A stretch of 64,000 nucleotides of DNA from Saccostrea echinata (taxonomy: Eukaryota). The notes beneath the pieces are model-generated. The model was given only the letters and a program-made list of their open reading frames with translations. It made no database searches and was not told the origin of the DNA. Below are positions 8,327 to 62,400 of the stretch, piece by piece (the stretch's first letter is position 1; each line of letters begins with the position of its first letter). Location of the stretch: assembly GCF_033153115.1 (NCBI RefSeq), contig NW_026889796.1, positions 12,834,001 through 12,898,000 of the forward strand, given 5' to 3'. The translations under genes and the position numbers were made by a program.

Positions 8327-8418
8327 ATGTGGGTTGTGTACAAGTAAGTCTATTTTTTATTTTACTAATAATATAAAAATGTTCTTCACAATCATGTTTT
8401 GCAGCCACTTAATGTAAA

Positions 8419-11400: not shown

Positions 11401-11953
11401 GAAGCTGAGGTCTACGGATAGTTCTACTGAAGCACTCAAACGACTACACTGGCTACCGGTACACTACCGCATTAAATTCAAACTTGCATGCATTGTCTTC
11501 AAGTGCATTAACGACAGTGACAGCCCACAGTATCTTAAAGAAATGCTCAGTTTACGAACATCATCATATAGCATTCGATCCGTAAATTCTGCAGCGAAAA
11601 CATTGAACGTCCCGTCCGTAAGACGCAAAACTTTTGTGGTCTTTCGCGGTAGCTGGACCTTCGATTTGGAATGATTTGCCAACGAACGTTCGAATGTTAA
11701 CTGATTTCTGTATTTCTAAACGACATCTCAAGGCGTTTTACTACACATGTGCATTTAAATAACATTTAATTGTGAACACTAGTATATTTTATTTAAACAG
11801 CCAGTGATCATTTAGACTTTATTTGATATTTTAACATATGCATTGTTTTTTTTTATTATATGTATGTATTTTATTGTATGTACAGCGCCAATGATTGCAT
11901 ATCGTATGTAAAATTGAGCGCTTTAACAAATTTTTAATAATAAATAATAATAA
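8419..11953 (+). mobile_element. Near full-length LINE (CR1/L2-like, EN+RT), inactivated
   Basis: ORFs 8475-9380 and 9402-10901 are in the same frame, separated by one TAA. A frameshift near 10830 leads into 10784-11674. Motifs: VNTQSI, CCVTETWL, GGGTG, VYRPP, TGDFNIH, SDH, NYRPVSNL, LDLSAAFDTVDH, VPQGS, YADD, LNPSKTE, LHWLPV. Ends in an (AAT)-like tail. Confidence 0.92.
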
Positions 11954-38188: not shown

Positions 38189-41100
38189 ATGGTTCTAGGA
38201 CTGTTTGATTCTGCTATTCCCTTCAAGGGACAGGTGTACAGTAAACTGAAGTCCCAGTGTGTGAGTTCTGGGACGCTGTTTCAAGATCCGGAATTCCCCC
38301 CAGATTCTTCGTCTTTGTTTTATACTAAATCTGCGCCGTCTAACATTGTATGGAAAAGACCCGGAGTAAGAAAATTAATGTTTAGCGCTATATATGACCC
38401 CAGTGTTGATTAAATAAATAATTAATTAAATAAATATTCTCTGCATAAATTGTATGTGTTCTCCATATGTTTTATTCCCCCAGACAATAATATTTTAATG
38501 TGGAACATATTTATTTTTTTGTAAAGATCAACTCGTATACTATAAATTCCACGGATATAGAAGCAATCAGCAAATATTCAAATATTTTTACATCAATTGC
38601 AAATGTCCCTAACTCTATCAAATCCTAAGGAGCTAACTGAAGATTAATGAATTTTATCTCATTAGGGCATAATTGAAGAGTAATTAACTTCATCTCTGTT
38701 GGAGATGATTGGAGAGTTATTAATTTTATCACATCAGGAGATTACTGCAGCTGGAGAGTCATTAATTTTACCTCATTAGGAGATTACTAGAAAGTAATTA
38801 ATTTTACCTCATTAGGAGATTACTGGAGAGTAATTACCGTTTTTCATTAGAAGATTACTAGAGAGTAATTACCTGTTTTCTTATTAGGAGATTACTGGAG
38901 AGTAATTAACTTTATCTCATAAGGAGATTACTGGAGAGTAATTACCTGTTTTCTTATTAGGAGATTACTGGAGAGTAATTACCTGTTTTCTTATTAGGAG
39001 ATTACTGGAGATCCTAAATTCTTCGTTGATGGTGCCAGTACTGATGACTTTCACCAAGGTTCACTTGGAAACTGTTGGTTTGTAGCGGCAGCAGCATGTA
39101 TAGCAGAGAAACCAAAACTCCTCAAACAGGTACGACCAAAAATAATGTTCTTTATAATATTCAGCTCAATAAATGGTGAATTTGTATTGTTCGTGTGTAT
39201 ATTAAGAAGACCATGATTGATTATAGATTGTCCCGGACATTGAAAAACAGGAATGGCTTCCGGAGAATAAAAACAAATATGCAGGAATATTTCACTTCCG
39301 GTTCTGGGTTTTAGGAGAATGGACGGACGTCGTTGTTGACGATTACTTACCAACTCAAAATGGAAACCTTATTTACATCCACTCTAATACCCGGAACGAA
39401 TTTTGGTCCGCTTTGTTGGAGAAAGCATACGCAAAGTGAGTCATAGAAATGTCAATTAATAAAACAATTTCACTGATAGTATGGAATTTCAATGGACGGT
39501 GACATACTAATTACACCTGCATGACACCGAACTGGAAAACAATGTATGCTGTATATTTTGTATCAGAGCTAGATTTGTTATGCAAGTACGAAAAGAAGTT
39601 ATAGTAAATTTCACTAAGTTTAATCGATGGATAAAACGCATTCGTCTATCAATTGGATATGCTTACATAATTTCCCTGTTTTCGGAAACACGGAAAATTC
39701 CACGCTGTCAGTGGAAATTTTACAAATGAACTAAGGACTAAGACCAATAATTTTAGCTGTTCCTAACATCTTGCCTACCTACCGTTTTTCAATAAATTTG
39801 CTCTCTGCAAATATCTTTTGAAATTCGTAAAAACAATTATAGGCATATCTTTTTTTTTTTCAAATTGATCTAAAGAAGAAAATCATTCGCGTAAAACATA
39901 GTACTGTTCTTTTATAAAATTTCATTCCAAAAGTCTTTGCAACGGACGTCTTACTTCTTTTCACTGTAGGATTTATGGTAGTTACGAAGTGTTGGAAGGA
40001 GGTCATGCTAAGGATGCTCTGGTCGACATGACAGGAGGGGTAGGGGAGGACATAACCGTGTCAAACTACACAGAGTCAGAGGAAAAGAAACAAAAATTAT
40101 TCAATATACTCAGCTCAGCCATTTCTAATCGTTCTCTGATTAGTGCTTCAATCAATGTAAGTTTTAATATTGACGAGAAAAGGTAAATTATGCTGATACA
40201 TGTACATAGCCTAACCATCCACTTAGAAGTGTGTTAAACGCTTTCCTTTTAAAGTCATACATATTCTTTTAAATTTATTTCCTTTAGGCAAAAGACGGTG
40301 AAATGGAGGATAAGACCAAAACAGGCCTGGTGAAGGGTCACGCCTACAGTGTCACAGACGTAAGGAAAATAAAACTAGGTCAAGGTCTTCTGGCTTTTTT
40401 TAAAAGAGAGTCTATGGAGATGGTTCGATGTCGCAATCCCTGGGGTGGCACAGAATGGACTGGGGCCTGGAGTGATGGGTAAGGATTCACAAAGCATATG
40501 TATACCTCCCTGTCAAGTTGAACGACGGGGCAACTGCTTCGAATGCAATTTGGGAGGATGTAATAGTGGATGGGAGAAGAGAGAAAGAGGAAGAGGAATT
40601 TGATGTTGGGGAAGGAGAAAGGAGATGGGGGAGTTGATCTTAGAAAGACATAATATTATAGGGAGCGATCATTTAATAAGATGGTAGTAGTGCGACAAAA
40701 ACTCTGAAATTTAATTTTTTGCCCAAAAATTTGTTTTGCAATTGGACATCTTCACATCGTCAGGGGTCCCACGTCTATTCGTGGCCCTGACGTTGTGAAG
40801 GTGTTGAAATGGGAAAAAAGACTAAGACATATAGTAGATTTTGGATTGTCAATAAATTATTGTAAACCTAAAATATGCAATAACGCCGATGAATCAGAAC
40901 TTTCAAGTTTCAAATACTCAGAAAAAAATGTTTTAAAGTTTGAATTTTGAATAAGCCAAATTAAGTTCCCGGAAAAAATAAAACATTTAGTAAATATTAT
41001 CAGTCTACTTAGAAAAATGGAAAACAGTATCACTTTAATCACAACAGTATGATTTTTGTTTAAAATTGTATCTTGGTGTTTGGTATTCAACTAAAAATTC

Positions 41101-44100
41101 AGTGAATTGTGTTGAATGTGTTAGATGAAGACAACAACAAAATCTCTATCTGTCATTACTAACGATTTTTGTCTGTATCGAAAGAAAAATGTATATCATG
41201 TTAATGTGTATGCATAGGAACTGTACTGTCATTTTAAATCGGGGTAGGTTTTTTTTAATGAATTGCTACATGTACATGTACTTGTAGGTCCGAAGAGTGG
41301 GCTAAAGTCAGCGATAGCGAGAAAAAGGAACTAGGAATCACCATAGAAGATAATGGAGAATTTTGGTAAAAATAATTTGAATCATCTTTTCCAAAATCTT
41401 ACGCACAATGCAGAAATATGTATAAAAAATATTGAGTAGAGTTTGCAAGAAGATCAGCTACTATATGATTATACGCATACTGCAATACAAAAGTTCGTGT
41501 TTTTAAATTTTGAAAATGTAGAAATATCCACATATTTCCGATTTCACTTTTGAAATACAATTTCCATTTTATGTACTCACATTCCATCGAAAATCTTTCG
41601 CTTATTTTTCTGTTTAGTTGCTGCATAGATATAGGGATTCAATATTTTTTTAGGATGTCATTTGAGGATTTCTGTAAGAACTTCACAAGTATTGACCTTT
41701 GCCACCTAATCAATACCTCATTTTTCTCCCTGTCTAAGACGTGGCACGAAGGTGTAGGAAAAGGCGAATGGACAGATAGTAGATGTGGGGGATCGTTTGG
41801 AAACGAAGATTACCTAAAAAATCCACAGGTAACAAAATTTATTTATAGCATCCAAGGTTTTATATCTGCATACAGTTAAACATTTATATCACGAATACCA
41901 TGGATATGTCGAAATGAGTTTGAACTCTCAACCCGTTTTTTCTATATGCATTATAACTTCAATGTCGAATCCTCGGAATCTCGAATTGGTTCGACCCCGT
42001 TTGACTTCAAAATAGATTGACTTTACTTCTTATATATATATTCTGGGATTCAAGCAATGTTGAAGACAATCTTTTCAAATTACTTAGTTTATTTTATTTA
42101 TTTTTCCAGTATGTTTTTGACGTAAATGATAAAGAGGACGAGGTTTTGGTCTCTTTACAACAAGCAGACACACGGGCATTTAAGGGCGAGGAAGGAAAAG
42201 AAATGTACGGAATTGGTTTCTTCATTACTAAGGTAACTATGGAAAAAAATTCAGAAACATAAAACATACTTTTGTTTTAAGGTAGTCAGATCCTCAGGTT
42301 CTGAAAATCAGCTTTTAAGTAATTGAAAATGCTCACAGAAATGTCTCTGATTTCACATAGTAACGTGAATTGACCCATGGAATTTCTTCAAAGTCCACCA
42401 TTGTAGTTAATCATATTATGTAGGGAAAATTATCAAATCTCAAATATATTTTAAGGAAATGCGAATAAAAACACCAGTTATGCATTTTCTAATTGAAAAT
42501 TGATGAACAAATATAATTTAGGATAGAAAAATATAGGTATCCAGGCATTTGGAGAAAATTGGATCTTTTTATGCTTGTATAGTATTTTAGTTCTTCTTTT
42601 TACTTCAATTGACAAATAATACATAGTGTAAAAAGCTTGTGCTATCATTGCTAAACATCACATATCACATCTAAGTTCTTATCATGCTAATAAGCAATGG
42701 TATCTAGTGCTAGACTAAAGGAAATTCGATTTCTCTAAAAATGAATTCAATTTTTTTTCTTTTATGGGTTACAAATGTCATCTTTTTACAAGACTGTTTC
42801 TAAGACTTCAAAGAACCTTGAATCATAATAAGATGCATAAAATGAAAATTGTTGCATGAAAAAATCTCAATTTCATGCTTCAATTTGAAACTTTTTAAAT
42901 AAAATAGTAAATTTAAGAGTTATCTTTCCTGACTGAGGATCGGATATCCTTAAGTGACTTTCCATGATTATAACCCTTTTACCATGCAATAGGCTGAGCC
43001 TTGGTGCAGGATCCCTTAGTGTTGAAGCACATGTGTACAAGTTGCCCCTCTTTCCTGGTTTGGAAAACGGCTAATACACTGTGCAATCGGAAGAACAACC
43101 TCAATGGTATTACATACATGAAGGCGTCCATTACAACTCATTGAAAAATGTAAAGAATTTTCTTATCTGTAAATTCTGGGACTAAACTTTGTTGAAAGCA
43201 ACAATATAATAATAGCATAATACAGACGAGAAACCAACTCTTCCTTGTCAGATGCTTAAATGATGGGAAACGGCTCAACTTGGTACAAAAGTTTAACAAT
43301 TGGCGATGTTAATGTATTCAGAGTGTTTTCCGAACTTTGCGGGAAAAGTCCAAGAAGTTTAACACGTTATTGTATAATTGAAACTGAAATTTTATCTGCA
43401 AGGATATCTTAAGCATCGTATTTTAATAAAGAAGTTTTATTTTGTTTTGATTTTTCATCATTTATTTAACACATTGCATTTAAAGAATAGAAATTAATCA
43501 ATTCAATATAAAATAGATATTATAAGAAACTCGTGATATTTGAATCATTCTTTATCATTTAACCCATTGATTTTGAAATATTTACTTCAGACTGATTTAA
43601 ATCGTGAGTATAGAATGCACGATAAGCTGGAGACGGCCCATTGTTCAGGATATGCCGTTAGCAGAGATGTTATGGAACGCGCCACCCTCAAGCGAGGGCG
43701 ATATGTGATATTTCCTACAACACATAAGCCGGACCAGAAAACGAAATATATTTTACGAATGTACTTCAGCTCCTCCCCCGACTTCAAGTGAGTATTTGAA
43801 GTTAAGGTGCATCGTCCCTCAATTTGAAATTAAGGTTCATCGTCCCACAATTTGAAGTTAAGGTTCATCGTCCCTCCATCGAAGTTAAGGGGGCTGACTG
43901 GGATTTGCATTACATGTACTTTGCACAGTGCAGTGAAAAAGAAGTGTATTTATTATCATTTTTTAAAGCAGTTACTTTATCACGATTTATCAAATAAAGA
44001 AATCAGAGATTAAAAAAATTGTTTTCATTTTTAAAACTGATTCTTTTTCCAAACGATTTTTCAACTGATAGGTAATTATTGTGAGTTTGTGACATTATAA

Positions 44101-45674
44101 AAAAAACAGAGGTTCTTTAAGAGGGGGTCATAAAAAGTGTTATAAAAGAAATAGTGTAAAATACTATTTAGGGTCGGGTAAAAAGACAATTTTCAAATTC
44201 CCCCCTCCCCCCCAGGGTATGCTCTGAAATTGTATCTATTTTTATTTTAATTAGATTTCTTTAAGAAATTCGTAAGTTTCAAAGCGAAATTTTATATGAT
44301 TGAACAGAGGGGCGATCAACCTTAATTAGAAATTTTATAAAGCAATAATAGTCATCAATCCTAGTGAAATAGTTGTTACATTGTAGTTCTTGGTTACTTG
44401 AAGGTCAATGAACCTTAAAACAGAAATTATAAAATATTTGTAGTCTTGATTAGATTATCCTTTGGATTTATCTCGAAGAAAACGTTTATTCGTATATATA
44501 TAATTATTTTGAAATATTTAATATCTTGTCACAGTTAGTTATGAAATTATATAAATTATATACAATCATGTACATGTGTGTATGTGTGAGTGTGACTTGG
44601 TATTATATGTAAGTGGAAAATGACGCCAAGACGAAGCAAGAAAAAAAAACATCATGAAAAAAAAACTTATTATAACGCACATATTTTTAAGGGAGTTGTG
44701 TTTTGACGAGCCACAGCCTCCTCAGTGTTGTTCATTCTTGTGTAAACCTCCAACAGCTGCGACACAAATCACGATAAACAGTGCCGACAATCTAGAGAGT
44801 ACTGCGCCCCTCCTAGGTATAGCCAATTCAAAGAAAATTGAAACTTCTAGATCTAGAATATTAAACAAATCAATGAAAGTGTTTTTCATGTTAAAAAATG
44901 GAAAATTAAAAAAAATCCTCTACTGAAAATGTAATATTTATGTTATCACATAACAGTATATTTACATTTTTTTAAATCCCCGTACAGACCCAGATCCCTA
45001 TTGTGAGATTTTCTGTGAGGGGAACAAAGTAAAAACCAGTGTCTGTAAAAGTACCAAAAACCCGAACTGGAACGAAAGAATTACCTTTTACCAAAAAAAA
45101 GACGGGGATATCAAAATAGAGGTACGTTTTTGCTATAAATATAAAAAAAAATGTCTCTGTAATTTTGGTGATTATAAAGCAATATGTCGTTTAAATTATA
45201 AAAATTTAGCAGTACATTACTACAATTCATTTATACCATTGATATACCAAACTAGTTAAGTTGGTATTTTCCCTCAAAAATGAGTGGATTTAATTCATGG
45301 GATGAAATGAACATCTAGATTTTCCAAAAATTCATTGAAAAAAAGTAAAAGATATAAACTATCTTTTTTCTTATAAATTTATGTATGGTAGTGTGGAAGT
45401 ATTTTGAATATTCTTGAAGATCTAATAAAAAATTACAGGTTTTTTTAGTTTGACTTTTACACCATTTTTTTTTAATTCATACTAGATTTGGAATGACAAT
45501 TTAATAAAGGACGATTTTCTTGGACAATGTGTGATTCCTTTGAAAGAGAAATCTAAATACACAGGAAAAACGATACAATTTCCTCTTTTGGGGAAAGGAA
45601 AGGAAGAAAGCACGAAACAAAAAGGAACGATTAGTGTGACTATATTACATACAAAGGAAATGGACACCGTATGA
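38189..45674 (+). CDS. CAPN5: Calpain-5 (TRA-3)-like protease, copy B, 638 aa, 12 coding exons
   Basis: Exons 38189-38365, 38998-39129, 39227-39435, 39970-40156, 40288-40478, 41288-41365, 41654-41828, 42110-42232, 43591-43787, 44692-44816, 44988-45121, 45486-45674. Intact C/H/N triad, C2 domain, same intron phases as copy A. Confidence 0.92.
38640..39011 (+). repeat. Minisatellite (about 33-40-bp unit) made of copies of the exon-2 splice acceptor of calpain B
   Basis: About ten copies of ...ttag|gagattactggaga gtaatt..., increasingly degenerate leftwards. The last copy is the real exon start at 38998. Confidence 0.9.
42281..42949. mobile_element. MITE with TTAA TSD (Kolobok-like)
   Basis: ttaa|ggtagtcagatcctcag ... 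ctgaggatcggatatcc|ttaa, imperfect TIRs. Confidence 0.65.
43795..43890. repeat. Short tandem repeat, about 28-bp unit, roughly 3.5 copies
   Basis: tttgaagttaaggtkcatcgtccc repeated immediately after a calpain B donor site. Confidence 0.8.
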
Positions 45675-48149: not shown

Positions 48150-49075
48150 GATGAAATATGTGGGGATAACGAACAGTATTCGAGCTCAAAAGGTCATTAA
48201 ACATTACAAAATAGGAGCAGAGCAAACACGGACCTCTAAGACATCAGAGTTGGGATCAGGTGCCATGGAGGAGTGAGCATCCCCTGCCGACCGGTCACAC
48301 CCGCCGTGTGCTCCTTGTCATGATCGGGAAATAACGGAAAATCCGTCGACAATTCAGTGTGTAAATAATGGCTTAACAATTAGTATGGAAAAAGTCAGTC
48401 AGCATTTGACTTAATGATAGATTTATTTGCTGACAAGGTCATTGTATCGATCACAGAACTTACGAATTGATGACTTTAAACGAGACTGCTGATATTCTTG
48501 TTTCATCAACTTGTTTGTCAATAACTTACCTCGTTTTAGAAATTGTTCATACGTACAGCATGCTCTGGCGTATCGAATCAACTGAGAAATATATACCCCG
48601 TATGCAGGTGATAAGGGTATATTGCTGCATAAGTAAGGGAAGTTGACGATTGAAATGTAAAAGTCATCACGTTTATCATAAAGCTTTGTTGTTAGATTAC
48701 TATTAACGTCTTTTTCTAATAAAATATCCAAATATGAAACAGATGTGTCAGACTCTGTGGTATCTTTTATCTCAAGCTCACCGCGATATATCGTGTCGAC
48801 ATAAGAATGGAAATAACCATTGTTAATTGACAATACATCGTCGATATATCTAAATGTCGAGTTGAAGGCAACAGCAAGTGTTTTCTTCCTTTCACATAAA
48901 AGATTTTGAACAAATTCTGCTTCATATGAATGCAAATATAGGTCTGCTTATAACGGGGCGCAATTAGTACCCATGAAAATTCTAATAGATTGTTGGAAGA
49001 CCTGGTCTCCAAAAACCACATAGATATTGTCAATCAGAAACTCGAGCATCTTTTTAATATCAAGTTCAGAGTAGG
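48150..49075 (-). mobile_element. 5'-truncated Penelope-like retroelement (RT C-terminal half plus 3' region)
   Basis: MLEFLIDNIYVVFG, MGTNCAP, FRYIDDVLSINN, SYLDILL, KLYDKRDDF, AYGVYISQLIRYARAC (ORF 48423-48935). A short copy of its end also lies at about 1637-1680. Confidence 0.8.
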
Positions 49076-49481: not shown

Positions 49482-52400
49482 TTATTTTTCTTGTTTCTTT
49501 AACCAGCTTGCATACATCTCCACATGGTCACGACTTTGTTCTTTGTCGATTTCCTCCATTATGACATCAGACAACTTCCGCTTAGTATCTGGATAATATA
49601 TTGCAATTATATAAGTTTCTCAAACGAATTTAAGTTTCACTTATAGCAAAGAAATATCTACGAAACACAATGAATGACTTGGGTAGTCTATTAAGGCAAA
49701 TTTCCACTTGACCTTTACCTTAAGATATTATACTGTTCTGAAAACTTCAACTGGTAAGGACAGTTAGAAATTTCGTTTTCGAGAAATGCAGTTGTTAACT
49801 GTGACCAATATTGAAGCCAATGCCAAGAAAGCGACAAAACATACATACCAATAAGGAATTCACGTTCTCCAGTTCTGGAGATGGTGAAACACCTATATCA
49901 TAAAAAAAAAACTCATTGGTTGAGTAGGTTGGACAAAACTTACCGTCATATTTAATGCATCTACATTTTTTCTGCATCTCCTCCGGGGTTGCCGCTGAAT
50001 CTAAGATGGCGGTAAGTTGTTCTACTAATGAGTCACACTGATCATACATCTGTTTCTTAGACAGCCCTGCTATCATTGATTTGTGCATTTCTGCAAGGGC
50101 TTTTACTGGTGTCAACATTTCGCCCGCAAAGTAGTAATCACAATTTTCACCCTGTCAAATATATACAACAAGATAACTTTTACTGGGTATTTTGAAGCAC
50201 AAACTGAGAATTCTTCAGAAACAATATGAAAGTGAAGGTAGAATAAAGATCAACCAAGGGATGTTCTTTGGTAAAAACTGAACCCTACTTCAGTGGAAAT
50301 GACAATTCATAGTAAGTAATCTTACCTCTACTCTGTAGAGCTTACACGGGAAAACTCGTCTTGTAGCAGCCATTTGTTTCACTATAGGTTTAACCTCAAA
50401 CGGGCCTTGTATTCTGTCGTCAGCCATAGTTAATAATGGTTTAAATTCACAACTTTTAGGGACGAATTGTAGGAGACTTCTTGAAACTTTAAATTTTTTC
50501 TTAATTGCTGTAAATTTTCGAATATCGTCTTGTTCCATTCTGCTCTCAAGTCGCTCGTTGAAATCTAGAAGAAATAAAAATGACAGTTCAATCTGTTTCT
50601 AATACCAGAATTTAACAGATCAATGAAATTTTCGAGTAACTAAGTTGAAAATCGGGATCGGGATTCCGTACCTGGAAGGACATGTCTGAGATAGTTAACA
50701 TGAAATGCCCAGGCCAATCCAAAAGCCACGTTACCAGCCGGGACCTGTGACCTTAAGGTTACAACATCACCTTCAAATACAAAATATATATGTAATTTTG
50801 CACAACATTTTTTTTGAACTGTGTGACTGATTAAACCAGGTGCATTACTGAAGTAATTTGTAGTATATTTTCTTCGTAGAGAAGCCAAATTGTGAGTTCA
50901 AGTTACATTGAATAAAAAAAAAAGTTCAGAAATGAGTTGAATTTGAAAAAAAAATACCTTTGATGATCTCATATATCCTTTCTTCATAAGAGGGCTCGTT
51001 AGAAATGTCTATATAAGTCACCCATTGAATAAAGTTAGGAATGAATGAACTATCAACGTCTTTTAGTAAAATAATGATTTTCAACTCATTTTTTTCGATA
51101 CAATCGTTCAGTAACCCTGCCAACCAAAATTCGATATAGTCTTTTCTTCTGACTGTATTGACCGATATCAAGCAACAAACCCATCTTGCATCTTTTATTC
51201 GTTCTTCTATTACTTCTAAAATAATAAATTATGTGATATGTTGTTTTTATATGTAAAACTGTCTCATTCAAAAGTTTTGGAAAAACGAAAGCTCACAGAA
51301 AACATCTTTAAGTTAATAGTCTATTTTAAAAGCAACATACAAAATCTTTATACATTTTGTTTTATTGCTATTTTACCTGGAGAGTCAACGGGTGGTCGTG
51401 CAATAGAGCATCGAGTTTTCTTATTTTCCAAAAACATCCGAATTTGCTTTATAGTTCTATTATCCGGGCTACTGCGAACCGAGTTCCGGTTTTCTAAAGC
51501 GTCAATGTCACTGTACAAAAAGCACACATCTACTGCACAATTTGATGTCGACCGTATCAGATGACTTGCTGGTCTGTCACTCTAAAATAAGGAAATACTC
51601 TGCTAAATTTCTGACGTTACATGGTAGATTAAAAAAAAAAAAAGAAAGAAAGTGACTCTGGAACAATTCTAATACCAGTGGTTTCATCATTGTCTCTTCT
51701 ATTGCGTCTCTGACACCATTAAACAAATTGTAAGAAGGGGTATTTTTCTCTCCCTTACCTTCATCTAAATTGGTAAAAAAGGAGGTAAAATTATTCTTAA
51801 AATGCGAAAGTAAATAAATTAAAACGGGAATATCGAAACGAATAGAAATTTCCACAAAATTCTGTGTTTAATTTTTTTTTTTTTAAATATTGCGAATGTA
51901 TTTTATTAGAAACAGATTAAACAAAAATATGCAGAGCATGAGTTTATTTGTTCTTCAAACATTTACTAGTATTTGTCTACTTCGACAAATTATTTTATAT
52001 AATCTTCGATTCATTAAAAGTTAAAATTCCTATCTTTCAGGACAAAATATATGTTCCAGATTCATAATATACATTAAATTATTCTAACGTTATTATATTT
52101 CAGTCTTAAGGTAAGAAAATGTGTCGAACAAACCATCAAACATGAGGACTCTTGCTCTTCCAATACATTCCTCATTTCGACTATGGTTCAGTATTTCCTC
52201 TATCTTGTATTTGAATCTTTCTACTTCCGTTTTGCGCTGTCGGGGAGTTAGGAGATTGAGTACTTCGTCTGCAATGAGCCCAAGAGCACACAGAGCACTG
52301 GGATATTCGGCACAGCAAAAATACTCCTAAGAGAAATTAGGCATGTTTATCTCTACAGGAACATGTATTTTAATAACTGAGTTATAGGAATGCATGTATT

Positions 52401-53230
52401 GCATTTGCAATGGTTTGCTCTCGTTTACCGACATGGAATACACATTGGTGGGGTTCATCAAAATCGTTTGTTCTAAGTTACGAATGTATATGTTCTTTTT
52501 GTTTATTTTGGAATATTTCCCCACATAAAATTATCATATTTTCCTATGGGGTCAAAAGCAAGTACAAAGGAAAAGAGGACATATGACGGAAGTCCGTAGT
52601 TTTGAACCTTTTGAGATGACTTTAAATTCGAAACAAAGTCACATATTAATCTATGTCAAACAAACATATACCACAAAAGCAAAATTCAATTTTTTTGTTT
52701 ACATCAATCAATTATTAATCTACAAATCTACAAATTATTGCAGAGTGTGGCAATTCCACTGCCACTGAAACGATATTTTCTGAAATAAGAGATCACCGAA
52801 TAATTATAAGGGATAATATTATGAATAATAAACTAATTATTTACGGTACAATGCAATGTTATATCTCCAACATGTGACTTAAGCTGAAAGCGTATAGCTT
52901 TACTCTGAACTATTAAGAAAAGTTTGATATTTAGAGATGTCGTCAGCTCAAAAAAATGCTAAGGTCAATATTTTGTTGTATTCTCTACTAGAATAAATCT
53001 TAAAGAATCCAAGAAATAAATAATAAATGTACTTATAAGTTTATAATCATTAAACAAGAGACCCCTGGGCCTCAACACTCTGAGTACCTTAGCCATGTTA
53101 TCCTTCAGAAGAAGTTTTATTTCTCTTTATTCTCGTGAAAAAAATTTTGATCTCATTTGGTGATCCCACCCTAGCTTCAAGCTTAAGAGGTCTTAACTTA
53201 TAAAACTTGAAGCACACAAGATTGGGATGC

Positions 53231-53305
<75 letters not shown>

Positions 53306-55512
53306 CATATCAATGTGGCTAACAAAGCCTTGCTGTACTGGAGATTTTCATTTAAATCATGGCCCTGATCATCGAAGTCTAATCATGAACCTACAGTTCT
53401 AGAGGAGATGGTTTATGAAGATTTTTTCCTATACATTTCGATATTAAAATTTGATCCCCTATCCTGGCCCATTCTACCCCTATGGACCATGATTCAAACA
53501 ATTTAGAAGTCCGACAGCTTTCAGATAGATTACGTTTCATATTTTCTCAGTGGTCCTTGAGAAGATTTTAAAATTTCCCATCGTTATTTTTGCATTTTGT
53601 TGATTATCTCTCCTTAAAAAAGCATGGTCCATTTATTTGTACAATTGAATCCCTTCACCCAAAAATATTCAGTGTCAAGTTTGGTTGATATTCACCAATT
53701 GGTTCTGGAGAAGAAGTTGAAAACGTGTGAAGTTTTTGCTAGTTTAATATTTCCTTACCTCCTCATTGCCCTCTTTATTCCTCCCTTTAACTTTGTAGAT
53801 TGTAGGATTAAATGGTCGGCCGTTAATAACCAAGTCGACTTTTCCTACATTTTTAACGTTTGAGTCTACGTCGGCGATGTCTCGTTGACCTGTTGCACTT
53901 GTAGGGCACAGCATAAAAAATACAGTTGACATTCTGCCTAGGTTATTTTGGAAAATATCAGACTTCTTTATCTGTTGAGCTAGATCTAGTAAAACAATTT
54001 TCATTTCAATCAGCCGAAGAATTAAACACCATATGCATCGTTTATACTATTGACTCATATTTAAGGTCGGCGTTGGACAGACAGAATGCTTTGGCGGAAA
54101 ATAAGTGGACGTTTAAGGGGAAATATTTTAGCGGAAGATTTATAGGAGGTTTTAGTGGAAGTTAAATTAGTATGTGGACATTTTAGCGGAAATCTAAGTA
54201 AAATGTATTTATGCTTCTTCCGTTAGTCCGACTAACTCCTTTGCCTCCTGCTTAGCAACAGGGGAGGTGGAAGTAAAATTTTGAGCGGAATATAATGTTC
54301 ATAAAAATACACTTAATGTCTAAAACACCAGCAGTCATTAAATATGAAGACAACCAAAAAGCATAGAAAAACATATTTACACCATTTACATGTCATTATT
54401 GGCTCTGTATCTGTTGATGTTGGGAACTTAGTAAATAGTTGGTCAGTTTTTGCTGACATTACATTGTATTGATTGTCTAAAATAAATAAAATCTACCTGT
54501 GAAAAAAGTCCGCTAAAATGTATATTGCATTTTTACAGATAACTACATTTTCTTAGGATATAAAATGTCCTAAAAATTTTCCGCTAAATTGTCCATTCAC
54601 ACCTTTTGCAATTCAGTTAAAATGCACTTCGCATATTAAAGGTAATGGGTTCGCTAGTGACGGTATGCTTAGCAATTTTGCTAGTCAACATGAATTTTGA
54701 AACTTCTTGCTAAAAGGTTTTTAGATTTTGTTCAAGTAAGATTTTCTAGTCAGGAAATATAAAAAATAATAATAATTTCGCTACATATTTTTGTTAATCA
54801 TATCATGGAAGAGGTAATGATACCTGGTAATATCAACTTCAAATACCCAGCGAAATGTGACCAGGCCATCCCAACAGCGAAGTTTCCAGCTGGTAGAAGT
54901 TGATTTAATTGTACCTCTCCTGTATAACGTACAGAGCAATGTGTTACAATACTCAGCGGAATTCAATAGCATGCAATAAAACCATTTCTACAGTTGGAAA
55001 ACAAACCGATATTCTCGAAATGAAAATCACAATTCCGTACTTTTTAAAGTCCGACACACGGTTTCCATACAACGTTCATGATAATTGTCCACTAAAACCA
55101 TCTGAGTTGCTTGTTGAAGGAAGGGAATTTTTGGTAAGTCTTGGACAGTCATGCCGTCAATTAGAAGCACCATGAGAGACAAACGACCAGTCTGCAGACA
55201 TTGTTCTAAAGCGAGATAGGTCTCTAAAGAAAAGTCTACTTCCTTTGCGCTCTCTGATAGGATTAGAAGTGTTTTTCGACTTTTCTGAATTGCCTTTGCA
55301 ATGCTTTTGTACTGATGTGCTCCAAGTGGAGTAGAGAAACCAGGACGAATATATTTTATATTTTCCCGATCAAAATTGTTTAAAATGGTTTTGAGAATTC
55401 TATATTCGTCATCTTCATTGTAAAAGATAGTGACGTCACTGTCGTCTATTCCCTTTATCCAATCATATTCTTCGTCACTGGAATCGTCACCAGGTGGGCG
55501 CGCTTCCGCCAT
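49482..55512 (-). CDS. STING: TIR-STING-TIR-STING protein, 730 aa, 11 coding exons, no transmembrane segment seen
   Basis: Exons 55512-55041 (TIR1); 54919-54824, 53985-53759, 52326-52134, 51764-51676 (STING1); 51581-51377, 51215-50958 (TIR2); 50770-50672, 50564-50326, 50151-49944, 49588-49482 (STING2). All GT-AG, phase-compatible, no internal stop. STING hallmarks GNFAVGMAWSHFAGYLKLILP and GNVAFGLAWAFHVNYLRHVLP (human [20 protein letters not shown]), plus CAEYPSAL and AGEMLTPV (human VLEYATPL). Confidence 0.92.
53052..53740. mobile_element. Degenerate satellite-containing interspersed repeat (Helentron/HINE-like) with an internal (TA)n
   Basis: Starts aacaagag...gggcc and carries degenerate units of roughly 160 bp with ggttctggagaagaag-like motifs; TA run at 53234-53301. 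The family call comes from my recollection of oyster repeats. Confidence 0.5.
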
Positions 55513-56436: not shown

Positions 56437-59400
56437 ATGGAGAAATATAAGCATGTTCTACCGGGACAGCATGTCTATAAAGGACGTTTATTTTTTGGTT
56501 TTTCGCCACCAGATGTTCTGGATGCCGTCAAAGATTTTGACGTCAGAGAAGATGACGTTTTTATTGTGACGTACCCAAAAGCAGGTATCTATAACTTTTT
56601 AAATTAAATCAGAATCTTAATGTTGAACATATTTCATACAAAGAAACTTTAAAGGATTTAGGAAATTGAATAAAAGAGTATGTGTTTTTCTCTGTAAAAA
56701 TAATAATAATAATAATAATAATCCTTCGGAATTTTTTGTTACTATCATGAAAATCACAATTATCTCGGCATATTTTTATATTAGCCAATAACTTTTTAAA
56801 ATCATTTAATAATTATTAGTAATAATTAAAAATCGATTCATTATAATTAACTTCACTGCAGATATATATATTTTATAAACAGAAATTAAAATTATTTGAG
56901 TTTTTCCTAGTTGATTTTAACCTCTGATAATACTGTTTGTAAATTATCTTTTTCTTTTTATCATCCTATAAATTTATTGTCTTTAACCCTCCAATTTCAT
57001 CTAACATTTCAAACAACATTATGTAAATAGTTCACTTTGACGCATTATCAGACCGTTCTTGTTTAAGTCAGGGCCGGATGTTGCACCAGAATGACATTAT
57101 ATAACAAGAGACCATGTAACATGAAAATGTCATATCTCTTTCCAAATTTATTTTTAATAATAATAACATATGATGGTTGTGAAAAACGATACCCTTTTTT
57201 CGTGAAGAATATTTTCCCCGTTTTTCTTTTTTATTAAACGTTAAACAATCAAACAGTTTCCGTTTGATAAGTATTTGACCATTTCATTTTTTTTTCTTCA
57301 ATAATACTGGATGAATGATTCATTACAATTATTAAGTTTTTTTTAATTATAGGAAATAAATATACATCTACTTCATTATCTAGATTTTTTTATTAAATGA
57401 ATAACAATCAAACAGTTTCCGTTTTACAAGTATTTAACCATTTCATTTTTTTTTTCGATAATAATGAATAAATATTTCATTACAATGTTTAAGTTTTAAT
57501 TATAGGAATTAATATACATGTTTTTCATTGTATAGATGATTATATTAAATTTGAAATGTGTAATACTATAAAGTCTATTAATTGAACGTCAAAATCTCAA
57601 AAGATGACATGTACATAATTGTATTAGTTTCAAGGCTATATAACTAAGAACCATCTTAAGGAAACACCAATTTTGATAGGTCCTTTTATAAAATTCAATT
57701 TATATGAGATTTGTACTCCTCGCAATAGTAAAATTAATGACCAAGAGGGATCCAAATCTGTATTGAAATGTGCATTGATCAGCTCATTATTATCTTAAAG
57801 TTAGAATGAAACGCGTATACATTTACATATCTTCGGTATTGAAAACAGATTAGGAATCATTTCCTTATTTGCTGACGTGGTTATAATCCTTTAACAACCT
57901 TAATTGTTTGAATTTAAAAAAAAAATATGAGCGTCATCAGATTCATTTTCCCCGTGCAGTACTGTAAATAACCTCGCCGACCCAGGCGACCCACCCTTGT
58001 TTTGCCCTGCAGCGACCCACCATTAATGACCATGCACTTAAGAATATAATTCAACTTACCTTGAGGAAGAAAATTTTCAAAAAAAAAAAAAGTGTGGAGT
58101 CGAAGTCGGGAGAAAATTTTCACTACTGAGAATTTTCTGTATCTAAAAATAGATCAAAGGTATTTACAACTCGTGGGGATTTCCTGTTAAGTCTACTTTC
58201 GGTTCCCCATAAATAAATTGACAACATAAGCTGATGTAAAGGGACACCCAGGAGATCCACCCAGCCCCACCCTAACCCCCAATCTTTGACAGCTGTGTCA
58301 AAAATAGTATTTAAAAACAAGCAAAATTATGATCAGGCTCCCCCTTTAATTTCCCACCAATTTTTTTATTTCCGGATAAGCTGACAATTGACTTTAAAAT
58401 ATGGAACGGTGGGAGTGTTTGATATTTATTACACCGTAATGATATACATTATGTATTTAAACAAAATGAAAAAGAGTATATTAAATATTCAAAACCATAA
58501 AAAGGTAAATTCATTACCTTTATTAAAAAGGTACACCATTCTTTTAAAGCACGAAGAATTTCATAGCATATATGTTGCATACATTGTATATGCAAATTAT
58601 GGATTTCGATTTAAACTATTAAATAAAGATAATGTTGTTCAATAATAATTTCTGAAATTTGTCCTTTTGAATCACTTAAAATCCTTATCTTCCAACAGTA
58701 AAATCCTATTTCAACAACCATTTACGCTAGAGTAATATCATAATTTTTATTTTATATTTTTCAGGCGCGGATCCAGGAATTTTTTCCAGAAGGGGGGGGG
58801 GGGTTCCACCCCAGTCAAAAAAAATTCCAACCCAGAAATTCCTTGACTAAAAAAAAATAAATATCCTTCCAAACCAAACCTATTAAACCATAAAAAATTC
58901 TTGACAAGCAAAACAAAAAAAAACCGTGAAATCCATTTCCCATTGGTCAAAAAAACCTATTTCGAGGTCGTGATGGTGGGGTCCACTTTTTCTTGGGGGG
59001 GGGGGGGGTCCAATGCCATTTTTTATACTTTTTATAACTCTGCAAATTCCGGGGGGGGTTCCGGACCCCCCCTCCCCGCCCCCTTTAGATTCGCGCATGT
59101 TTTTTTTTAATTTTATTTATATATTTATTTATTTATTTTTTGCAAATATTTTGCGATAAAGTCAGATTATTCAAACTTGCAAATTTTCAAAAAATCACTA
59201 CATGTATAAAGTTTTTTATTGACATTTTACAGTAAGCCATAAGTTTATCAAATAAACTGAATTTCCCGGGGGGGGGGGGGGGGGACTGTGGCATTGATCA
59301 AATTGTATATTTTTATATTCACATAACTTGATCTGATTTAACAATATTGATATAATAAAACTATTATACGTTTAAGTAAATAGGTACTTGTTTTAATGAA

Positions 59401-62400
59401 TATCGATCTGTAAAGTAATTTAGTAGAATACATGAATTATACTTTCGATAGATCTTCGAATTTCTACGTACTACATGTATTTCGAAATGCTGTCCTTGTA
59501 ACTTTGAAATACAAAGCACTTGTTAATATATTGAACTAACCATATCTTAACAAATTTACGCTATTTTTTTTTCGTTATAATGAAGCTCTCCTACCTGAGA
59601 AATTAATTTATCTTCAATTTTTTTTTAGGAACAACTTGGCTTCAAGAAATTGTATGGCTGATTGTAAACGATGGAAACATCCAAAAAGCAAAGGTGGAGC
59701 AAGTCTACTTTCGGTCGCCATTTTTGGAATTCAAAGACCTGGTGCTAAACGAAGTAGGCCTCGAACTTGCTAAACCCATGCCCTCCCCAAGGGTCATAAA
59801 AACTCATCTCCCCGTGGATCTGGCACCTACTGGGATCTTCAAAACCAAATGCAAAGTAACATTTATTTATTTCAAATTTATTTATTCATTTATTTATCTT
59901 TTAATTTTGAGGGTTTTTAAAAAAAAAAATTATTTATATATTTATTCATTTATTTATTTATTCATTTATTTTTTTGAGTAAGCTGTTTTTAATAACTTCA
60001 AGCGGAGTTTAAACTTAGTTAGTGAATTTTGAAAAACAAGATTTACCTGCCAAGTATTTTTTTAAAATATATATTTATTTCTTATTATTATTTCAAATTG
60101 TTTACTATTTTATCAATTATTTTCTAATTATAGTGAACGAGGCCAAATGAAAATTAATTTTATATTAGATATTCCACTGCAGGAAGAAACTGTTTTGAAG
60201 TTTAAATTTCTCGTTAAGTTAAAATTTCTCGAACGAGATGTAAAATAACACACAATCAATCAAATATTATTTTTTCATTTCAAATTTTTACATGATTTTT
60301 GTTTATCTTAAACATCACTCTGATTAAAATCAGATCCTTTGATCCGCTCAAATAGATCGCTACACACCTTGTGTAGCGATCAATGTGAGCGGATCAAAGG
60401 ATCTGATTGTAATCAGATTTTCTTAAACATATGATCTGATTTATAAATTTAAATTCTTTCATGAGGAAAGTTAATTCTTCTATAATTGTGAATTACAGAA
60501 ATTCAGTATCATGCAACAATTAATGAACTTATATAATTTTTTCTCATGCATCCAATATTTGTTCACTTGCAAGTAAAAAAAAAAAGTAATGAAATTTTAT
60601 TATCTACAAATATTACAGGATTTTTTTTAAAAATGTATTTCTCCATGGTTACCTTTCTTTATTGTCTCAACAGAAATTAGTCCTGTTTAGGAATCCAAAG
60701 GACCTTTGCGTCTCCTATTTCCACTTTTATCGTTCCAGTTCGTCCTTTGGAAACTTCCAAGGAAGTTGGCCGGAGTTTCTGGAAATGTTTTTAGATGGAC
60801 ATGGTATAATCCTAAATAAATTAATTTCCTTTTCATAAAAATTAAACTGAATTTATTTTTTTATGTTGGAAAATTAATATATGTATTGACTGAAAATTTA
60901 TACTGAATATTTATTTTGTATATGCATTTATAATGTGAGCACCACCTCTCGAGTGGCCTCTTTTATATCGATATCACTACGGCGTCAGAAAATCCCCAGT
61001 GTAATATAAAAAGTGCAGAATTTTCATCCAGATAAATTTAAAATTTTAGACTTAAATGGCATCTTTTTTTTCAAATTCCTGCTAAGCTTACAGTAATTTT
61101 TAATTTTATCGTGGCGTCCGGAAATCTTTAAATGTTAACATTCATTTTCCACAGTCGACCATGGTTCCTGGTTTGATTTCACAAAAGGATGGTGGGATAA
61201 GAGGGATAACTCTGATGTCTATATTTTGTATTACGAGGATATGAAAAAGGTTAGAGTTATCGGACATTTCTTTCTGTGAGGGGAAAAAGTTATTTAAAAA
61301 TTTTCATTGATATAAATTCTTAAGGTATTCAATATGTATAGGTGCGCCTTGGGTATATAACATGTACATGTAATTATGCATGGCATATACATGTACATGT
61401 ATATGATTGTCATTGTGCCCGCATTTTTTATCGATGTATAAAGGATCGTCTCTTTTTTTTTCTTTTCGTAAGGATCTGAAAAATGAAATTAAGAAGATGA
61501 GCTGCTTTCTCGATAAGAGCGACATATCAGAAGATACAGTGGACAAAATAGCCAATCACTGCTGCTTTGAGAGCATGCGCACAAACCCTATGACAAATCA
61601 CCACGACGTATATTCCATCAACAAAGAGATTTCACCTTTACTCCGAAAAGGTTGTATATATGGTATTTCTTTAAAAGCATTTAAAGAATCAAATTACATT
61701 GTAATTCTTTGTCGGTTAAATTGTTGAATAAAAGATGAAGATATGTAAATTGTTAATTTCAAGATCATATCCTGTAGTCATTACCGTCTTTTCAAGAGGG
61801 GTGGGGGTGGGGGTTGGATTTGAACAATTCAATTCAATTCAATTCGTTTATTTACCAATTAAGGGCCCTCATGGGGCAAAAAGAAAGTACATTGTTAAAA
61901 TGTATGTAATGATTATGATCATACACATTAAAAGCCAGGCCTATTTATTAGAGAGTCTAAATACTAAATTATGCTTGCTTAATGCTAACAAGTAACTGAC
62001 TTTAAAAATAAATAAATAAATGAATAATTGTCCAAATGGCCTTTTGTTGTTCTATAGGAGAAAAGACGATTTCTCTCTCTTGTTTTTATCTCTAGGGTTA
62101 TATCATTATTATGTGAAATAATCAATATTTATTTAATATTTGAAAACAAAATTAATCACCCTTCACCTGTACTAAACATTACAATTTTAAAAGTACGTTG
62201 TTTTGTACTTTTTAAGATTATACTCTAAGTCTTATATATAATACAAATGTGTAGGTTTATAATTAGTATGTTCATGAAGGAATATGATACAATGTAAGTT
62301 TTCTTGCAATTCTGGTACATTTCAAGCTGTGATAAAGTGGGCGTATTTGGATATCAATATACAAAAGTAAATTAATTGTCATGTATCTTTTAGTACATGC

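What the first reader, a model, noticed from the sequence alone, without database searches (positions are those of the whole stretch)
49944..54919. The two STING domains have different ligand-pocket residues: candidate asymmetric single-chain cyclic-nucleotide receptor
Alignment by eye to human STING. Both repeats keep the Y167, R238 (GRPF; RRVF) and E260 equivalents and have F at Y240. STING1 keeps S162 and G166 but has H at Y163 and S-A at T263-P264, with a visibly shorter lid. STING2 has A/F/N at 162/163/166 but keeps T-P. Neither shows an obvious R232 equivalent, the residue linked to 2'-5' linkage recognition. Inference: an intramolecular pseudo-heterodimer would give a non-symmetric pocket suited to a mixed-base or unusual-linkage second messenger. 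Alternatively, two homotypic pockets would make a two-input sensor.
Basis: partly seen in the sequence, partly recalled or inferred. Interest (0 to 1): 0.75.

Follow-up and report, generated by a model that had tools for sequence, protein, structure and literature searches.

The report
Oyster tandem TIR-STING receptor gene
This oyster gene encodes one soluble protein with two TIR and two STING nucleotide-sensor domains whose binding-pocket residues differ in a way conserved across oysters, mussels, scallops and ark clams, so the two halves may form a lopsided single-chain sensor, though this is untested.

Summary
Window 49482-55512 (minus strand) holds an intact 11-exon gene. Its product is the publicly annotated 730-aa protein P0076, with the architecture TIR-STING-TIR-STING. 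S1 has S162, H163, G166, Y167, R238, F240, E260 and S-A at 263-264, with a lid 6 residues shorter. S2 has A162, F163, N166, Y167, R238, F240, E260 and T-P. Neither has an R232 equivalent.

New here: the repeat-specific signature is conserved across Pteriomorphia. S1 has S-H..G in 21 of 21 units. S2 has N166 and P264 in 22 of 22. S1 and S2 split on a tree with 100/99 support. Both evolve at similar rates. In this genome N166 and H163 occur only in tandem genes.

The pseudo-heterodimer idea is only partly supported. AlphaFold pTM is 0.59 for this protein and 0.63 for a paralogue, which suggests a compact chain, but I could not see coordinates and found no binding data.

The architecture is already in annotations and in one 2024 paper. 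I found the asymmetric-pocket reading in no paper searched.

The parts
49482..55512 (-). Whole coding span of the TIR-STING-TIR-STING gene: 11 coding exons, 2193 nt, 730 codons plus stop. The product equals public protein P0076.
   Evidence: tblastn of P0076 is 100% identical inside the exon bounds. GT-AG junctions were solved with consistent phases for nine of the ten; the exon 7/8 junction gave no solution in the script and was set by hand from the splice-site lists. Exon lengths sum to 2193.
55041..55512 (-). Exon 1: ATG at 55512 and TIR1 (aa 1-157 plus 1 base). The Glu at the TIR catalytic-site position is E97, codon 55224-55222.
   Evidence: Pfam TIR_2 and TIR. Aligns with the TIR of 6wt6. 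E97 column.
54824..54919 (-). Exon 2: S1 alpha1 helix with the G174xxxS178 motif. Codons: S178 at 54860-54858, H179 at 54857-54855, G182 at 54848-54846, Y183 at 54845-54843. Phase-1 introns lie on both sides.
   Evidence: PF15009 at 29.4 bits. Aligned to 6wt6 and human STING. Codons checked.
53759..53985 (-). Exon 3: S1 beta-sheet and shortened lid. Codons: R246 at 53818-53816, F248 at 53812-53810.
52134..52326 (-). Exon 4: S1 C-terminal half. Codons: E272 at 52308-52306, P274, S275 at 52299-52297, A276 at 52296-52294.
51676..51764 (-). Exon 5: last helix of S1. It is followed by a low-confidence linker, aa 357-371.
   Evidence: tblastn. pLDDT is below 50 at aa 357-371.
51377..51581 (-). Exon 6: linker and the N-terminal part of TIR2.
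   Evidence: TIR_2 on P0001 covers residues 395-508.
50958..51215 (-). Exon 7: C-terminal part of TIR2.
   Evidence: Pfam TIR_2. Junctions.
50672..50770 (-). Exon 8: S2 alpha1 helix (G531xxxA535). Codons: A535 at 50708-50706, F536 at 50705-50703, N539 at 50696-50694, Y540 at 50693-50691. It has the same phase-1 introns as exon 2.
50326..50564 (-). Exon 9: S2 beta-sheet and lid. Codons: M611 (the R232 position) at 50373-50371, R616 at 50358-50356, F618 at 50352-50350.
49944..50151 (-). Exon 10: S2 C-terminal half. Codons: E637 at 50121-50119, T640 at 50112-50110, P641 at 50109-50107.
49482..49588 (-). Exon 11: last helix of S2, the C-terminal tail and the stop codon.

Best explanation
The gene encodes a soluble 730-aa innate-immune receptor, TIR1-S1-TIR2-S2. 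It arose by an ancient internal duplication of a whole multi-exon TIR-STING unit. This part is shown. Both STING ligand-binding domains keep the universal cyclic-dinucleotide core: the Tyr167 stacking residue, the lid Arg238 and Glu260. They carry fixed, repeat-specific pocket-floor residues. S1 has Ser162, His163, Gly166, Pro262, Ser263 and Ala264, with a truncated lid. S2 has Ala162, Phe163, Asn166, Thr263 and Pro264. Neither has an Arg232 equivalent. This part is also shown.

The rest is inferred. S1 and S2 pair with each other inside one chain through their alpha1 helices (GxxxS in S1, GxxxA in S2). They rebuild the usual V-shaped STING dimer as a pseudo-heterodimer with one non-symmetric pocket. 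That pocket would hold one cyclic dinucleotide in a fixed orientation. One half-site offers Ser162 and Ser263. The other offers Asn166 and Thr263. Such a pocket would suit a mixed-linkage or mixed-base signal such as the 2'3'-cUA that oyster cGLR1 makes. Lid closure would then drive side-by-side oligomerisation and bring the TIR domains together to signal. TIR1 keeps the catalytic-site Glu across the family and TIR2 mostly does not.
For: Gene and product: 100% exon match to P0076. There are 11 GT-AG exons summing to 730 codons plus stop. The intron phases in the two LBDs are identical (1, 1, 0, 1).

Fold: STING_LBD matches in two stretches and TIR_2 matches in its near-identical orthologue P0001. 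Both LBDs of the model match solved STINGs at Z 21.5-21.7 and rmsd 2.0-2.4 A.

Residues.

Conservation (22 units from 20 proteins, many of them close relatives): S1 has S162, H163 and G166 in 21 of 21 units each; S1 has P262 in 22 of 22; S1 has A or V at 264 in 22 of 22; S2 has N166, Y167 and P264 in 22 of 22 each. One further mussel protein, P0093, fits.

Own genome: 4 tandem genes carry the signature wherever I read it, which was 3 S1 and 4 S2 alpha1 exons. The single TIR-STINGs and the canonical STING have Y or F at 163, and G at 166 in all but one; that one divergent single copy has Arg. None has H163 or N166.

Age and constraint: the S1/S2 split has 100/99 support with mirrored subtrees. 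S1 versus S2 is 20% identical, while each is 48-49% identical to its mussel and scallop orthologues.

Relevance of the positions: S162 (Ser versus Asn) and T263 (Thr versus Ser) set linkage preference in coral STINGs (PMC9980059, section 9 passages). GxxxS is the dimerisation motif. G166E lies in the pocket and is proposed to mimic a ligand phosphate and engage R238 (PMC9343627 passages).

Compactness: pTM is 0.59 at mean pLDDT 75.3, and 0.63 at 77.1 for paralogue P0026. By my own estimate, two independent TIR-STING halves would give about 0.43-0.50. The S1-to-TIR2 linker is about 15-20 low-confidence residues, so chain geometry does not obviously forbid pairing.
Against: I never observed an S1-S2 contact. 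The tools return no coordinates or PAE. The pTM values are moderate, and the 0.43-0.50 baseline is my estimate, not a computed control. The alignments given to AlphaFold had only 20 and 15 rows.

The TIR-to-STING orientation in the model differs from the C. gigas crystal structure (TMt 0.51, rmsd 11 A), so the inter-domain geometry of the model is not reliable.

A fixed G-versus-N asymmetry fits hetero-pairing, but it would equally fit two specialised homodimers.

Both lids lack an R232 equivalent and the S1 lid is truncated, so ligand binding itself is unproven. Some family members lose core residues: S1 Y167 is L or F in 2 of 21 units, and S2 R238 is K in 6 and I or V in 2 of 22.

Confidence: 0.5

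Rival explanations
1. Two-input sensor. S1 pairs with S1 and S2 pairs with S2 of a second chain, either as a head-to-head dimer or as a daisy chain. This gives two symmetric pockets with different ligand preferences in one assembly.
For: Every solved STING is a homodimer (titles and passages). Each repeat keeps a small-xxx-small motif on alpha1. S1 and S2 each carry their own conserved specificity residues. Ylistrum P0008 strings four units in one chain, which shows that the units can be multiplied.
Against: After fusion, the high local concentration favours the partner within the same chain. N166 would face its own copy in an S2-S2 pair; G166E in human STING, the only precedent read, is a disease-causing gain-of-function change. 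pTM of 0.59 and 0.63 for single chains suggests that the halves pack on each other. N166 and H163 were found in no single-LBD STING of this genome.
Confidence: 0.22
2. S1 and S2 do pair, but only one half is a true receptor. The other half (S1 with its truncated lid, or S2 with Asn166 occupying the phosphate site) is a structural or autoinhibitory partner. The protein would then be a half-site or pre-closed sensor rather than a reader of asymmetric ligands.
For: The S1 lid is 6 residues shorter and lacks the R232 segment. S1 Y167 is lost in some group B and C members and in one tandem gene of this genome. G166E in human STING is proposed to mimic a phosphate and close the lid without ligand (PMC9343627 passage), and S2 always has Asn at that position.
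Against: Both repeats evolve at the same rate, about 49% identity to mussel for each. Both keep Y167, R238 and E260 in the window's clade. That is not what a decaying pseudo-domain looks like.
Confidence: 0.15
3. Neither domain binds a cyclic dinucleotide any longer. The tandem LBDs would serve as a scaffold or bind another ligand, and the TIR domains would signal constitutively or through other partners.
For: Neither repeat has an R232 equivalent, the lids are short, and the pocket floor is unusual. No binding data were found for any tandem STING.
Against: The contacts described as universal for STING ligand binding, aromatic stacking and the lid Arg (PMC9980059 section 9), are kept in both repeats of the window gene. 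Alpha1 and the pocket motifs are the most conserved parts of the protein (invariant columns).
Confidence: 0.1
4. Annotation artefact: two neighbouring TIR-STING genes wrongly joined into one model.
For: Single TIR-STING genes do lie in tandem clusters elsewhere in this genome. Read-level splice evidence for this copy could not be obtained.
Against: Exons 5 and 6 join in phase with GT-AG and there is no stop or start between the units. Unnamed Logan contigs of only 2.4-3.1 kb are recorded as encoding full 733-764-aa orthologues, which fits spliced transcripts. A mussel orthologue of 722 aa is deposited as 'stimulator of interferon protein 2'. The same architecture was predicted independently in at least 12 species.
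Confidence: 0.03

Closest known systems
Crassostrea gigas TIR-STING fusion (PDB 6WT6 and 6WT7)
   Same: It is a soluble metazoan protein with an N-terminal TIR followed by a STING LBD. It is the best sequence match in the PDB (E 2.9e-27) and the best Foldseek match. It shares the LPxGN..AW..GYLK.ILPD alpha1 motif.
   Different: It has one TIR and one LBD per chain. Its pocket floor is canonical (G162, Y163, G166) and its lid is full length with the DRAG segment. At 263-264 it has G-V. The relative TIR/LBD orientation differs from the model (rmsd 11 A). This genome has its own orthologues of that single type on other contigs.
Canonical transmembrane STING (human; C. gigas 8YDN)
   Same: The LBD fold is the same (Z 21.7, rmsd 2.0 A against human 154-336). 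Y167, R238 and E260 are kept, and T263-P264 are kept in S2.
   Different: The window protein has TIR domains where the canonical STING has its N-terminal transmembrane part. It has two LBDs in one chain and no R232 equivalent. S1 has H163. S2 has N166.
Coral paralogues Sp-STING1 and Sp-STING3 (PDB 8EFM, 8GJZ, 8EFN)
   Same: Ligand preference is diversified by changes at the pocket floor (human positions 162 and 263), the same positions that differ between S1 and S2. They are among the best sequence matches to S1.
   Different: In the coral the variants are separate genes that form symmetric homodimers with transmembrane domains. Here the two variants sit in one polypeptide.
Bivalve tandem STINGs already in databases and print
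   Same: They have the same TIR-STING-TIR-STING architecture. Examples are Mytilus galloprovincialis 'stimulator of interferon protein 2' (P0090), C. gigas LOC105344500 and Mizuhopecten LOC110447478. [quoted passage not shown]
   Different: Those records describe domain content only. I found no analysis of repeat-specific pocket residues, of pairing mode or of ligands.
Bacterial CBASS TIR-STING
   Same: It combines a TIR and a STING LBD. Ligand-driven filament assembly activates the TIR (passages in PMC8204762).
   Different: The fusion arose independently. The oyster TIR clusters with animal TIRs (PMC10732462 passage). It has a single LBD, forms a homodimer and binds 3'3'-c-di-GMP. NADase activity is not known for the oyster proteins.

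Membership tests
STING ligand-binding domain (Pfam PF15009) | Sequence match above the curated cut-off | tested here: met
   Exon 2 alone scores 29.4 bits against a cut-off of 27. The close orthologue P0001 scores 173.3 bits in two stretches.
STING ligand-binding domain (Pfam PF15009) | The alpha+beta LBD fold with a long kinked alpha1 helix | tested here: met
   In the AlphaFold model, S2 residues 527-712 match human STING at Z 21.7 and rmsd 2.0 A. S1 residues 170-356 match duck STING at Z 21.5 and rmsd 2.4 A.
STING ligand-binding domain (Pfam PF15009) | Universal ligand contacts: an aromatic at 167 that stacks on the base, and the lid Arg238 | tested here: met
   Y183 and R246 in S1; Y540 and R616 in S2. 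Their definition as universal contacts comes from PMC9980059 section 9.
STING ligand-binding domain (Pfam PF15009) | The GxxxS dimerisation motif on alpha1 | tested here: met
   S1 has G174xxxS178. S2 has G531xxxA535, which is small-xxx-small. The motif is taken from a PMC9343627 passage.
STING ligand-binding domain (Pfam PF15009) | Arg232 in the lid (typical of metazoan 2'3'-cGAMP binders; its role is recalled, not taken from a call) | tested here: not met
   In S1 the position falls in the 6-residue lid deletion. In S2 it is M611.
STING ligand-binding domain (Pfam PF15009) | Binding of a cyclic dinucleotide | not testable with these tools
Metazoan TIR-STING fusion (6WT6 type) | A TIR domain directly N-terminal to a STING LBD, with no transmembrane region | tested here: met
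   The order is TIR1-S1 and TIR2-S2. The secondary-structure layout of the model shows TIR folds where a TM-STING would have membrane helices. No dedicated transmembrane predictor was run.
Metazoan TIR-STING fusion (6WT6 type) | One LBD per chain that forms a symmetric homodimer | tested here: not met
   There are two LBDs per chain, only 20% identical to each other. The oligomeric state itself cannot be tested here.
Bivalve tandem TIR-STING-TIR-STING family | The four-domain order plus the repeat-specific signature: S1 with W-S-H-x-x-G and P262; S2 with N166 and P264 | tested here: met
   The window product P0076 carries it, as do 21 of 21 (S1) and 22 of 22 (S2) units. It sits in group A of the tree.
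Catalytic (NADase) TIR domains | A conserved Glu at the catalytic-site position after the W/F-x-x-x motif (the definition of the motif is recalled) | tested here: inconclusive
   TIR1 has E97, kept in 21 of 22 units. The equivalent TIR2 position is Glu in only 8 of 22. The Glu is necessary but not sufficient for activity, and activity was not tested.

The most novel reading that the evidence does not exclude
The bivalve tandem STINGs are obligate single-chain pseudo-heterodimers, which would be the first STING receptors with a built-in asymmetric pocket. S1 (Ser162, Ser263, Gly166, short lid) and S2 (Ala162, Thr263, Asn166) would each read one nucleotide of a mixed-linkage, mixed-base signal such as oyster 2'3'-cUA, in one fixed orientation. 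Asn166 of S2 would replace the phosphate contact lost with Arg232. An equally asymmetric TIR pair would follow: TIR1 competent and TIR2 degenerate.
Probability: 0.3. Interest if true: 0.8.

Novelty: new variant of a known kind. Interest (0 to 1): 0.62.

Why it matters
Every STING studied so far is a symmetric homodimer that must accommodate ligands which are themselves asymmetric. If these proteins are single-chain heterodimers, they would show a second way to build the pocket. Each half could specialise for one nucleotide or one linkage. That would help explain how bivalves, which carry tens to hundreds of cGLR genes (PMC9980059), sort many second messengers. It would also provide a natural template for engineering orientation-specific cyclic-dinucleotide sensors. 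The conserved S1 and S2 signatures found here give concrete, testable mutations and constructs. If the halves instead form homotypic pockets, the protein is a two-input sensor, which would also be new for STING.

Tried and rejected
The Pfam and PDB searches of single exons worked but were weak for the middle exons (E 0.0005 to 0.7). Firm numbering came only after I found the annotated product P0076.

The search for homologous proteins gave the same 7 proteins with P0001 and with the 11-row alignment A1, so the second search added nothing. The third search, restricted to the S2 region, added one protein, P0093. It found no single-LBD protein with an S2-type domain, but its word filter and length window make that blank weak.

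The search of protein representatives with TIR1 returned only 20 hits. They were enough to seed the family but are not a census.

I hoped to read S1-S2 contacts from the AlphaFold models. No model file is exposed, and Foldseek and VIA compare single chains only. Only pTM could be used.

I considered and rejected the idea that one repeat is a decaying copy, because both diverge at equal rates. I also rejected the idea that the tandem form is a mis-joined pair of genes.

A cGLR-like ORF lies about 48 kb away on the same strand. Calpain genes and a LINE lie between, and cGLRs are very numerous in bivalves. I do not treat this as an operon-like link.

Morehouse et al. 2020 (PMC7572726) is not held. 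Statements about 6WT6 and 6WT7 therefore rest on PDB titles and alignments. The role of R232 and Gerdol's earlier descriptions of mussel TIR-STINGs are recalled, apart from the reference list seen. Table S5 of PMC9980059 (the STING catalogue) may already list tandem STINGs.

Full report
WHAT IS THERE. The finding lies inside a minus-strand, multi-exon gene of a low-GC (about 0.33) animal genome. Stop-to-stop pieces on the minus strand match Pfam STING_LBD six times and TIR_2 twice, in the order TIR, STING, TIR, STING. A TIR1-exon search of 1.84 billion representatives returned only 20 proteins. Several were 713-730 aa long with two TIR and two STING_LBD stretches.

The closest, P0001 (Saccostrea cucullata), shares its 90% cluster with P0076, a 730-aa protein annotated as 'uncharacterized protein LOC133203040'. 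P0076 matches the window's exons at 100% inside the exon bounds. I therefore used P0076 as the product and did not join the exons myself. The joined step was left out.

Coordinate arithmetic with GT-AG sites gives 11 coding exons: 55512-55041, 54919-54824, 53985-53759, 52326-52134, 51764-51676, 51581-51377, 51215-50958, 50770-50672, 50564-50326, 50151-49944 and 49588-49482. They sum to 2193 nt, which is 730 codons plus stop. The script gave no solution for the exon 7/8 junction, so I set it by hand from the splice-site lists. The four introns that cut each STING domain have the same positions and phases (1, 1, 0, 1) in both repeats. The gene therefore arose by internal duplication of a whole TIR-STING unit.

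THE OBSERVATION.

- Alpha1 helix. S1 reads ...AWSHFAGY..., so S162=S178, Y163=H179, G166=G182 and Y167=Y183. S2 reads ...AWAFHVNY..., so A535, F536, N539 and Y540. Both were aligned to human and C. gigas STINGs.
- Lid. R246 and F248 in S1, and R616 and F618 in S2, sit on R238 and Y240.
- E260 region. S1 has E272-Y-P-S275-A276. S2 has E637-M-L-T640-P641.
- Lid length. The S1 lid has six gap positions against both 6wt6 and coral Sp-STING1 8gjz, and the gaps remove the segment that carries R232. In S2 the R232 position is M611, with a one-residue deletion.
- Structure. The structural alignment of the AlphaFold model confirms the register: residues 527-712 match human 154-336 (Z 21.7, rmsd 2.0 A) and residues 170-356 match duck STING (Z 21.5, rmsd 2.4 A).

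Note that the crystallised single C. gigas TIR-STING itself lacks T263 and P264, having G-V there. Those two positions alone therefore do not decide whether a STING binds ligand.

WHAT IS NEW HERE: CONSERVATION. Tandem TIR-STING-TIR-STING proteins occur in Saccostrea, Crassostrea gigas, C. angulata and C. virginica, Pinctada, four Mytilus species, Mizuhopecten, Ylistrum (a four-STING chain) and Tegillarca. All are pteriomorphian bivalves.

I tabulated 22 units from 20 proteins. Many rows are close relatives; roughly 13 lineages are distinct.

- S1: S162, H163 and G166 each in 21 of 21 units (one model lacks alpha1). Y167 in 19 of 21. R238 in 21 of 22. P at 262 in 22 of 22. A or V at 264 in 22 of 22. 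E260 is E in 15, Q in 6 and D in 1.
- S2: N166, Y167 and P264 each in 22 of 22. An aromatic at 163 in 22 of 22. Position 162 is A in 14, G in 7 and S in 1. R238 is R in 14, K in 6 and I or V in 2. E260 is E in 18, Q in 2 and L in 2.

One more mussel protein, P0093, fits.

A maximum-likelihood tree of 15 S1 and 15 S2 domains separates the two sets with 100/99 support. It shows the same three paralogue groups (A, B, C) inside each (seven near-duplicate proteins, i.e. 14 of the 44 domain rows, were dropped before building).

Within P0076, S1 and S2 are 20% identical. Each is 48-49% identical to its mussel or scallop orthologue and 58% identical to its pearl-oyster orthologue. Both are therefore under similar purifying selection.

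The short S1 lid is specific to group A. Group C S1 lids still carry an R-A-G segment.

THE SAME GENOME. A six-frame search with PF15009 and local annotation found four tandem genes: this one, one on C54 and two on C8. It also found three single TIR-STING genes on C14, mirrored on C76, and one canonical STING on C4.

The alpha1 exons read as follows:
- Tandem S1: AWSHFAGY, AWSHFTGY, VWSHYTGL.
- Tandem S2: AWAFHVNY, AWAFFMNY, AWTYVLNY, AWNYVLNY.
- Singles: AWGYYFGY, AWVYYFGY, AWGYYFRY.
- Canonical: AWSFYFGY.

H163 and N166 thus occur only in tandem genes here: 0 of 4 distinct non-tandem alpha1 exons have either. The S1 alpha1 exon of one C8 gene was not fetched.

HOW IT MAY WORK. These points are shown: two intact, divergent LBDs with the universal contacts, and differing residues at the pocket floor.

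These points come from papers. In coral STINGs, Ser versus Asn at human position 162 and Thr versus Ser at position 263 switch preference between 2'3'- and 3'3'-linked ligands. Oyster cGLR1 makes 2'3'-cUA (PMC9980059: section 8 read whole; passages of sections 5-7 and 9). Alpha1 carries a GxxxS dimerisation motif. G166E lies in the pocket and is proposed to mimic a phosphate and engage R238 (PMC9343627 passages). S1 therefore offers Ser162 and Ser263, while S2 offers Ala162, Thr263 and Asn166.

This point is inferred. The two LBDs pair within the chain into a pseudo-heterodimer with one asymmetric pocket. Ligand closure then drives oligomerisation and TIR clustering.

The only structural hint is pTM: 0.59 at mean pLDDT 75.3 for P0076, and 0.63 at 77.1 for the paralogue P0026. 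By my estimate, two mutually unconstrained TIR-STING halves would give about 0.43-0.50, so the models imply some confidence in how the halves pack. I could not read coordinates or PAE. The alignments were shallow, at 20 and 15 rows. The TIR/LBD orientation disagrees with 6wt7 (TMt 0.51, rmsd 11 A). The linker from S1 to TIR2 has pLDDT below 50 over residues 357-371, so it is probably flexible and does not forbid pairing.

AGAINST MY READING. No contact was observed, no ligand was tested and no expression evidence was obtained for this copy. The run search listed five holders with 0.23-0.30 of the sampled words.

The fixed G-versus-N asymmetry is equally compatible with two specialised homodimers. 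The loss of the R232 equivalent in both lids may mean weak or no cyclic-dinucleotide binding. Some relatives have lost core residues in one repeat, which would fit a half-dead partner.

COMPARISON WITH WHAT IS KNOWN, AND NOVELTY. The domain architecture is not new. PMC11103948 (passage) describes oyster STINGs with two STING and two TIR domains. A mussel orthologue is deposited as 'stimulator of interferon protein 2'. A review figure legend mentions novel oyster STINGs with TIR domains. Reviews call eukaryotic TIR-STINGs rare and of unclear role (PMC10732462 passages).

I found no paper that analyses the two pockets, their pairing or their ligands. The searches were made, and a search for 'TIR-STING-TIR-STING' found 0 papers. 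Subscription journals and supplements were not searchable. I therefore file the gene as a member of the known bivalve tandem TIR-STING family, and the conserved asymmetric-pocket signature as a new variant of a known kind of receptor.

VERDICT.

Noticed in passing
window 2-1219 (-): An open frame of 406 aa runs off the window start. It matches the Mab-21 nucleotidyltransferase domain (30.8 bits) and Mab-21_C (52.6 bits), so it is a cGLR-like gene on the same strand about 48 kb from the STING gene. Calpain genes and a LINE lie between, and with so many cGLRs in bivalves the proximity may be chance.
   Followed up: partly
window 55222-55224 (E97, TIR1) and aa 456 of P0076 (TIR2): The two TIR domains are also asymmetric. 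The Glu at the TIR catalytic-site position is kept in TIR1 in 21 of 22 units, but in TIR2 in only 8 of 22, all of them oyster group A.
   Followed up: partly
G000 contigs C14 (about 124-186 kb) and C76 (about 766-808 kb): A cluster of three single TIR-STING genes on C14 is mirrored on the 2.1-Mb contig C76, with the same or nearly the same exon peptides in the opposite orientation. C76 may be an uncollapsed haplotig. One copy in each cluster reads AHDFAWGYYFRY (G158D and G166R), which suggests a divergent or dead copy.
   Followed up: partly
G000 contig C8, about 9.94-9.975 Mb: Two group-C tandem TIR-STING-TIR-STING genes lie on opposite strands. In the minus-strand copy, S1 has Leu at the Y167 stacking position (VWSHYTGL). 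A stop interrupts one calpain-unrelated exon match on the plus-strand copy (IM*NGKNE), so that copy may be broken.
   Followed up: no
window 53986-54004 (-), just upstream of the exon 3 acceptor: The open frame continues into intron 2 and reads MKIVLL before DLAQQ. This resembles the end of exon 2 (LKLILP|D). tblastn even extends its match across it. It may be chance, or a remnant of how the intron arose.
   Followed up: no
window 8418-11671 (+) and 48423-48935 (-): A LINE-like element has endonuclease/exonuclease/phosphatase and reverse-transcriptase ORFs. Directly 3' of the STING gene there is an open frame of 170 aa with a YIDD motif that recalls reverse transcriptases. Pfam matched nothing in it at E 0.001.
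   Followed up: partly
window 33089-45256 (+) and 56437-61724 (+): Calpain-family exons lie between the cGLR-like ORF and the STING gene (PF00648 at 96.8 bits). A sulfotransferase gene lies head-to-head with the STING gene, and the two start codons are about 0.9 kb apart.
   Followed up: partly
window about 53200-53350, intron 3: A long (TA)n-type microsatellite reads as YIYIYI in two frames.
   Followed up: no
P0008 (Ylistrum balloti, 1422 aa): One annotated scallop protein strings four TIR-STING units (S1-S2-S1-S2) in a single chain. Its S2 units have lost the lid Arg. It could be a true double-tandem or two genes fused by the annotation.
   Followed up: no
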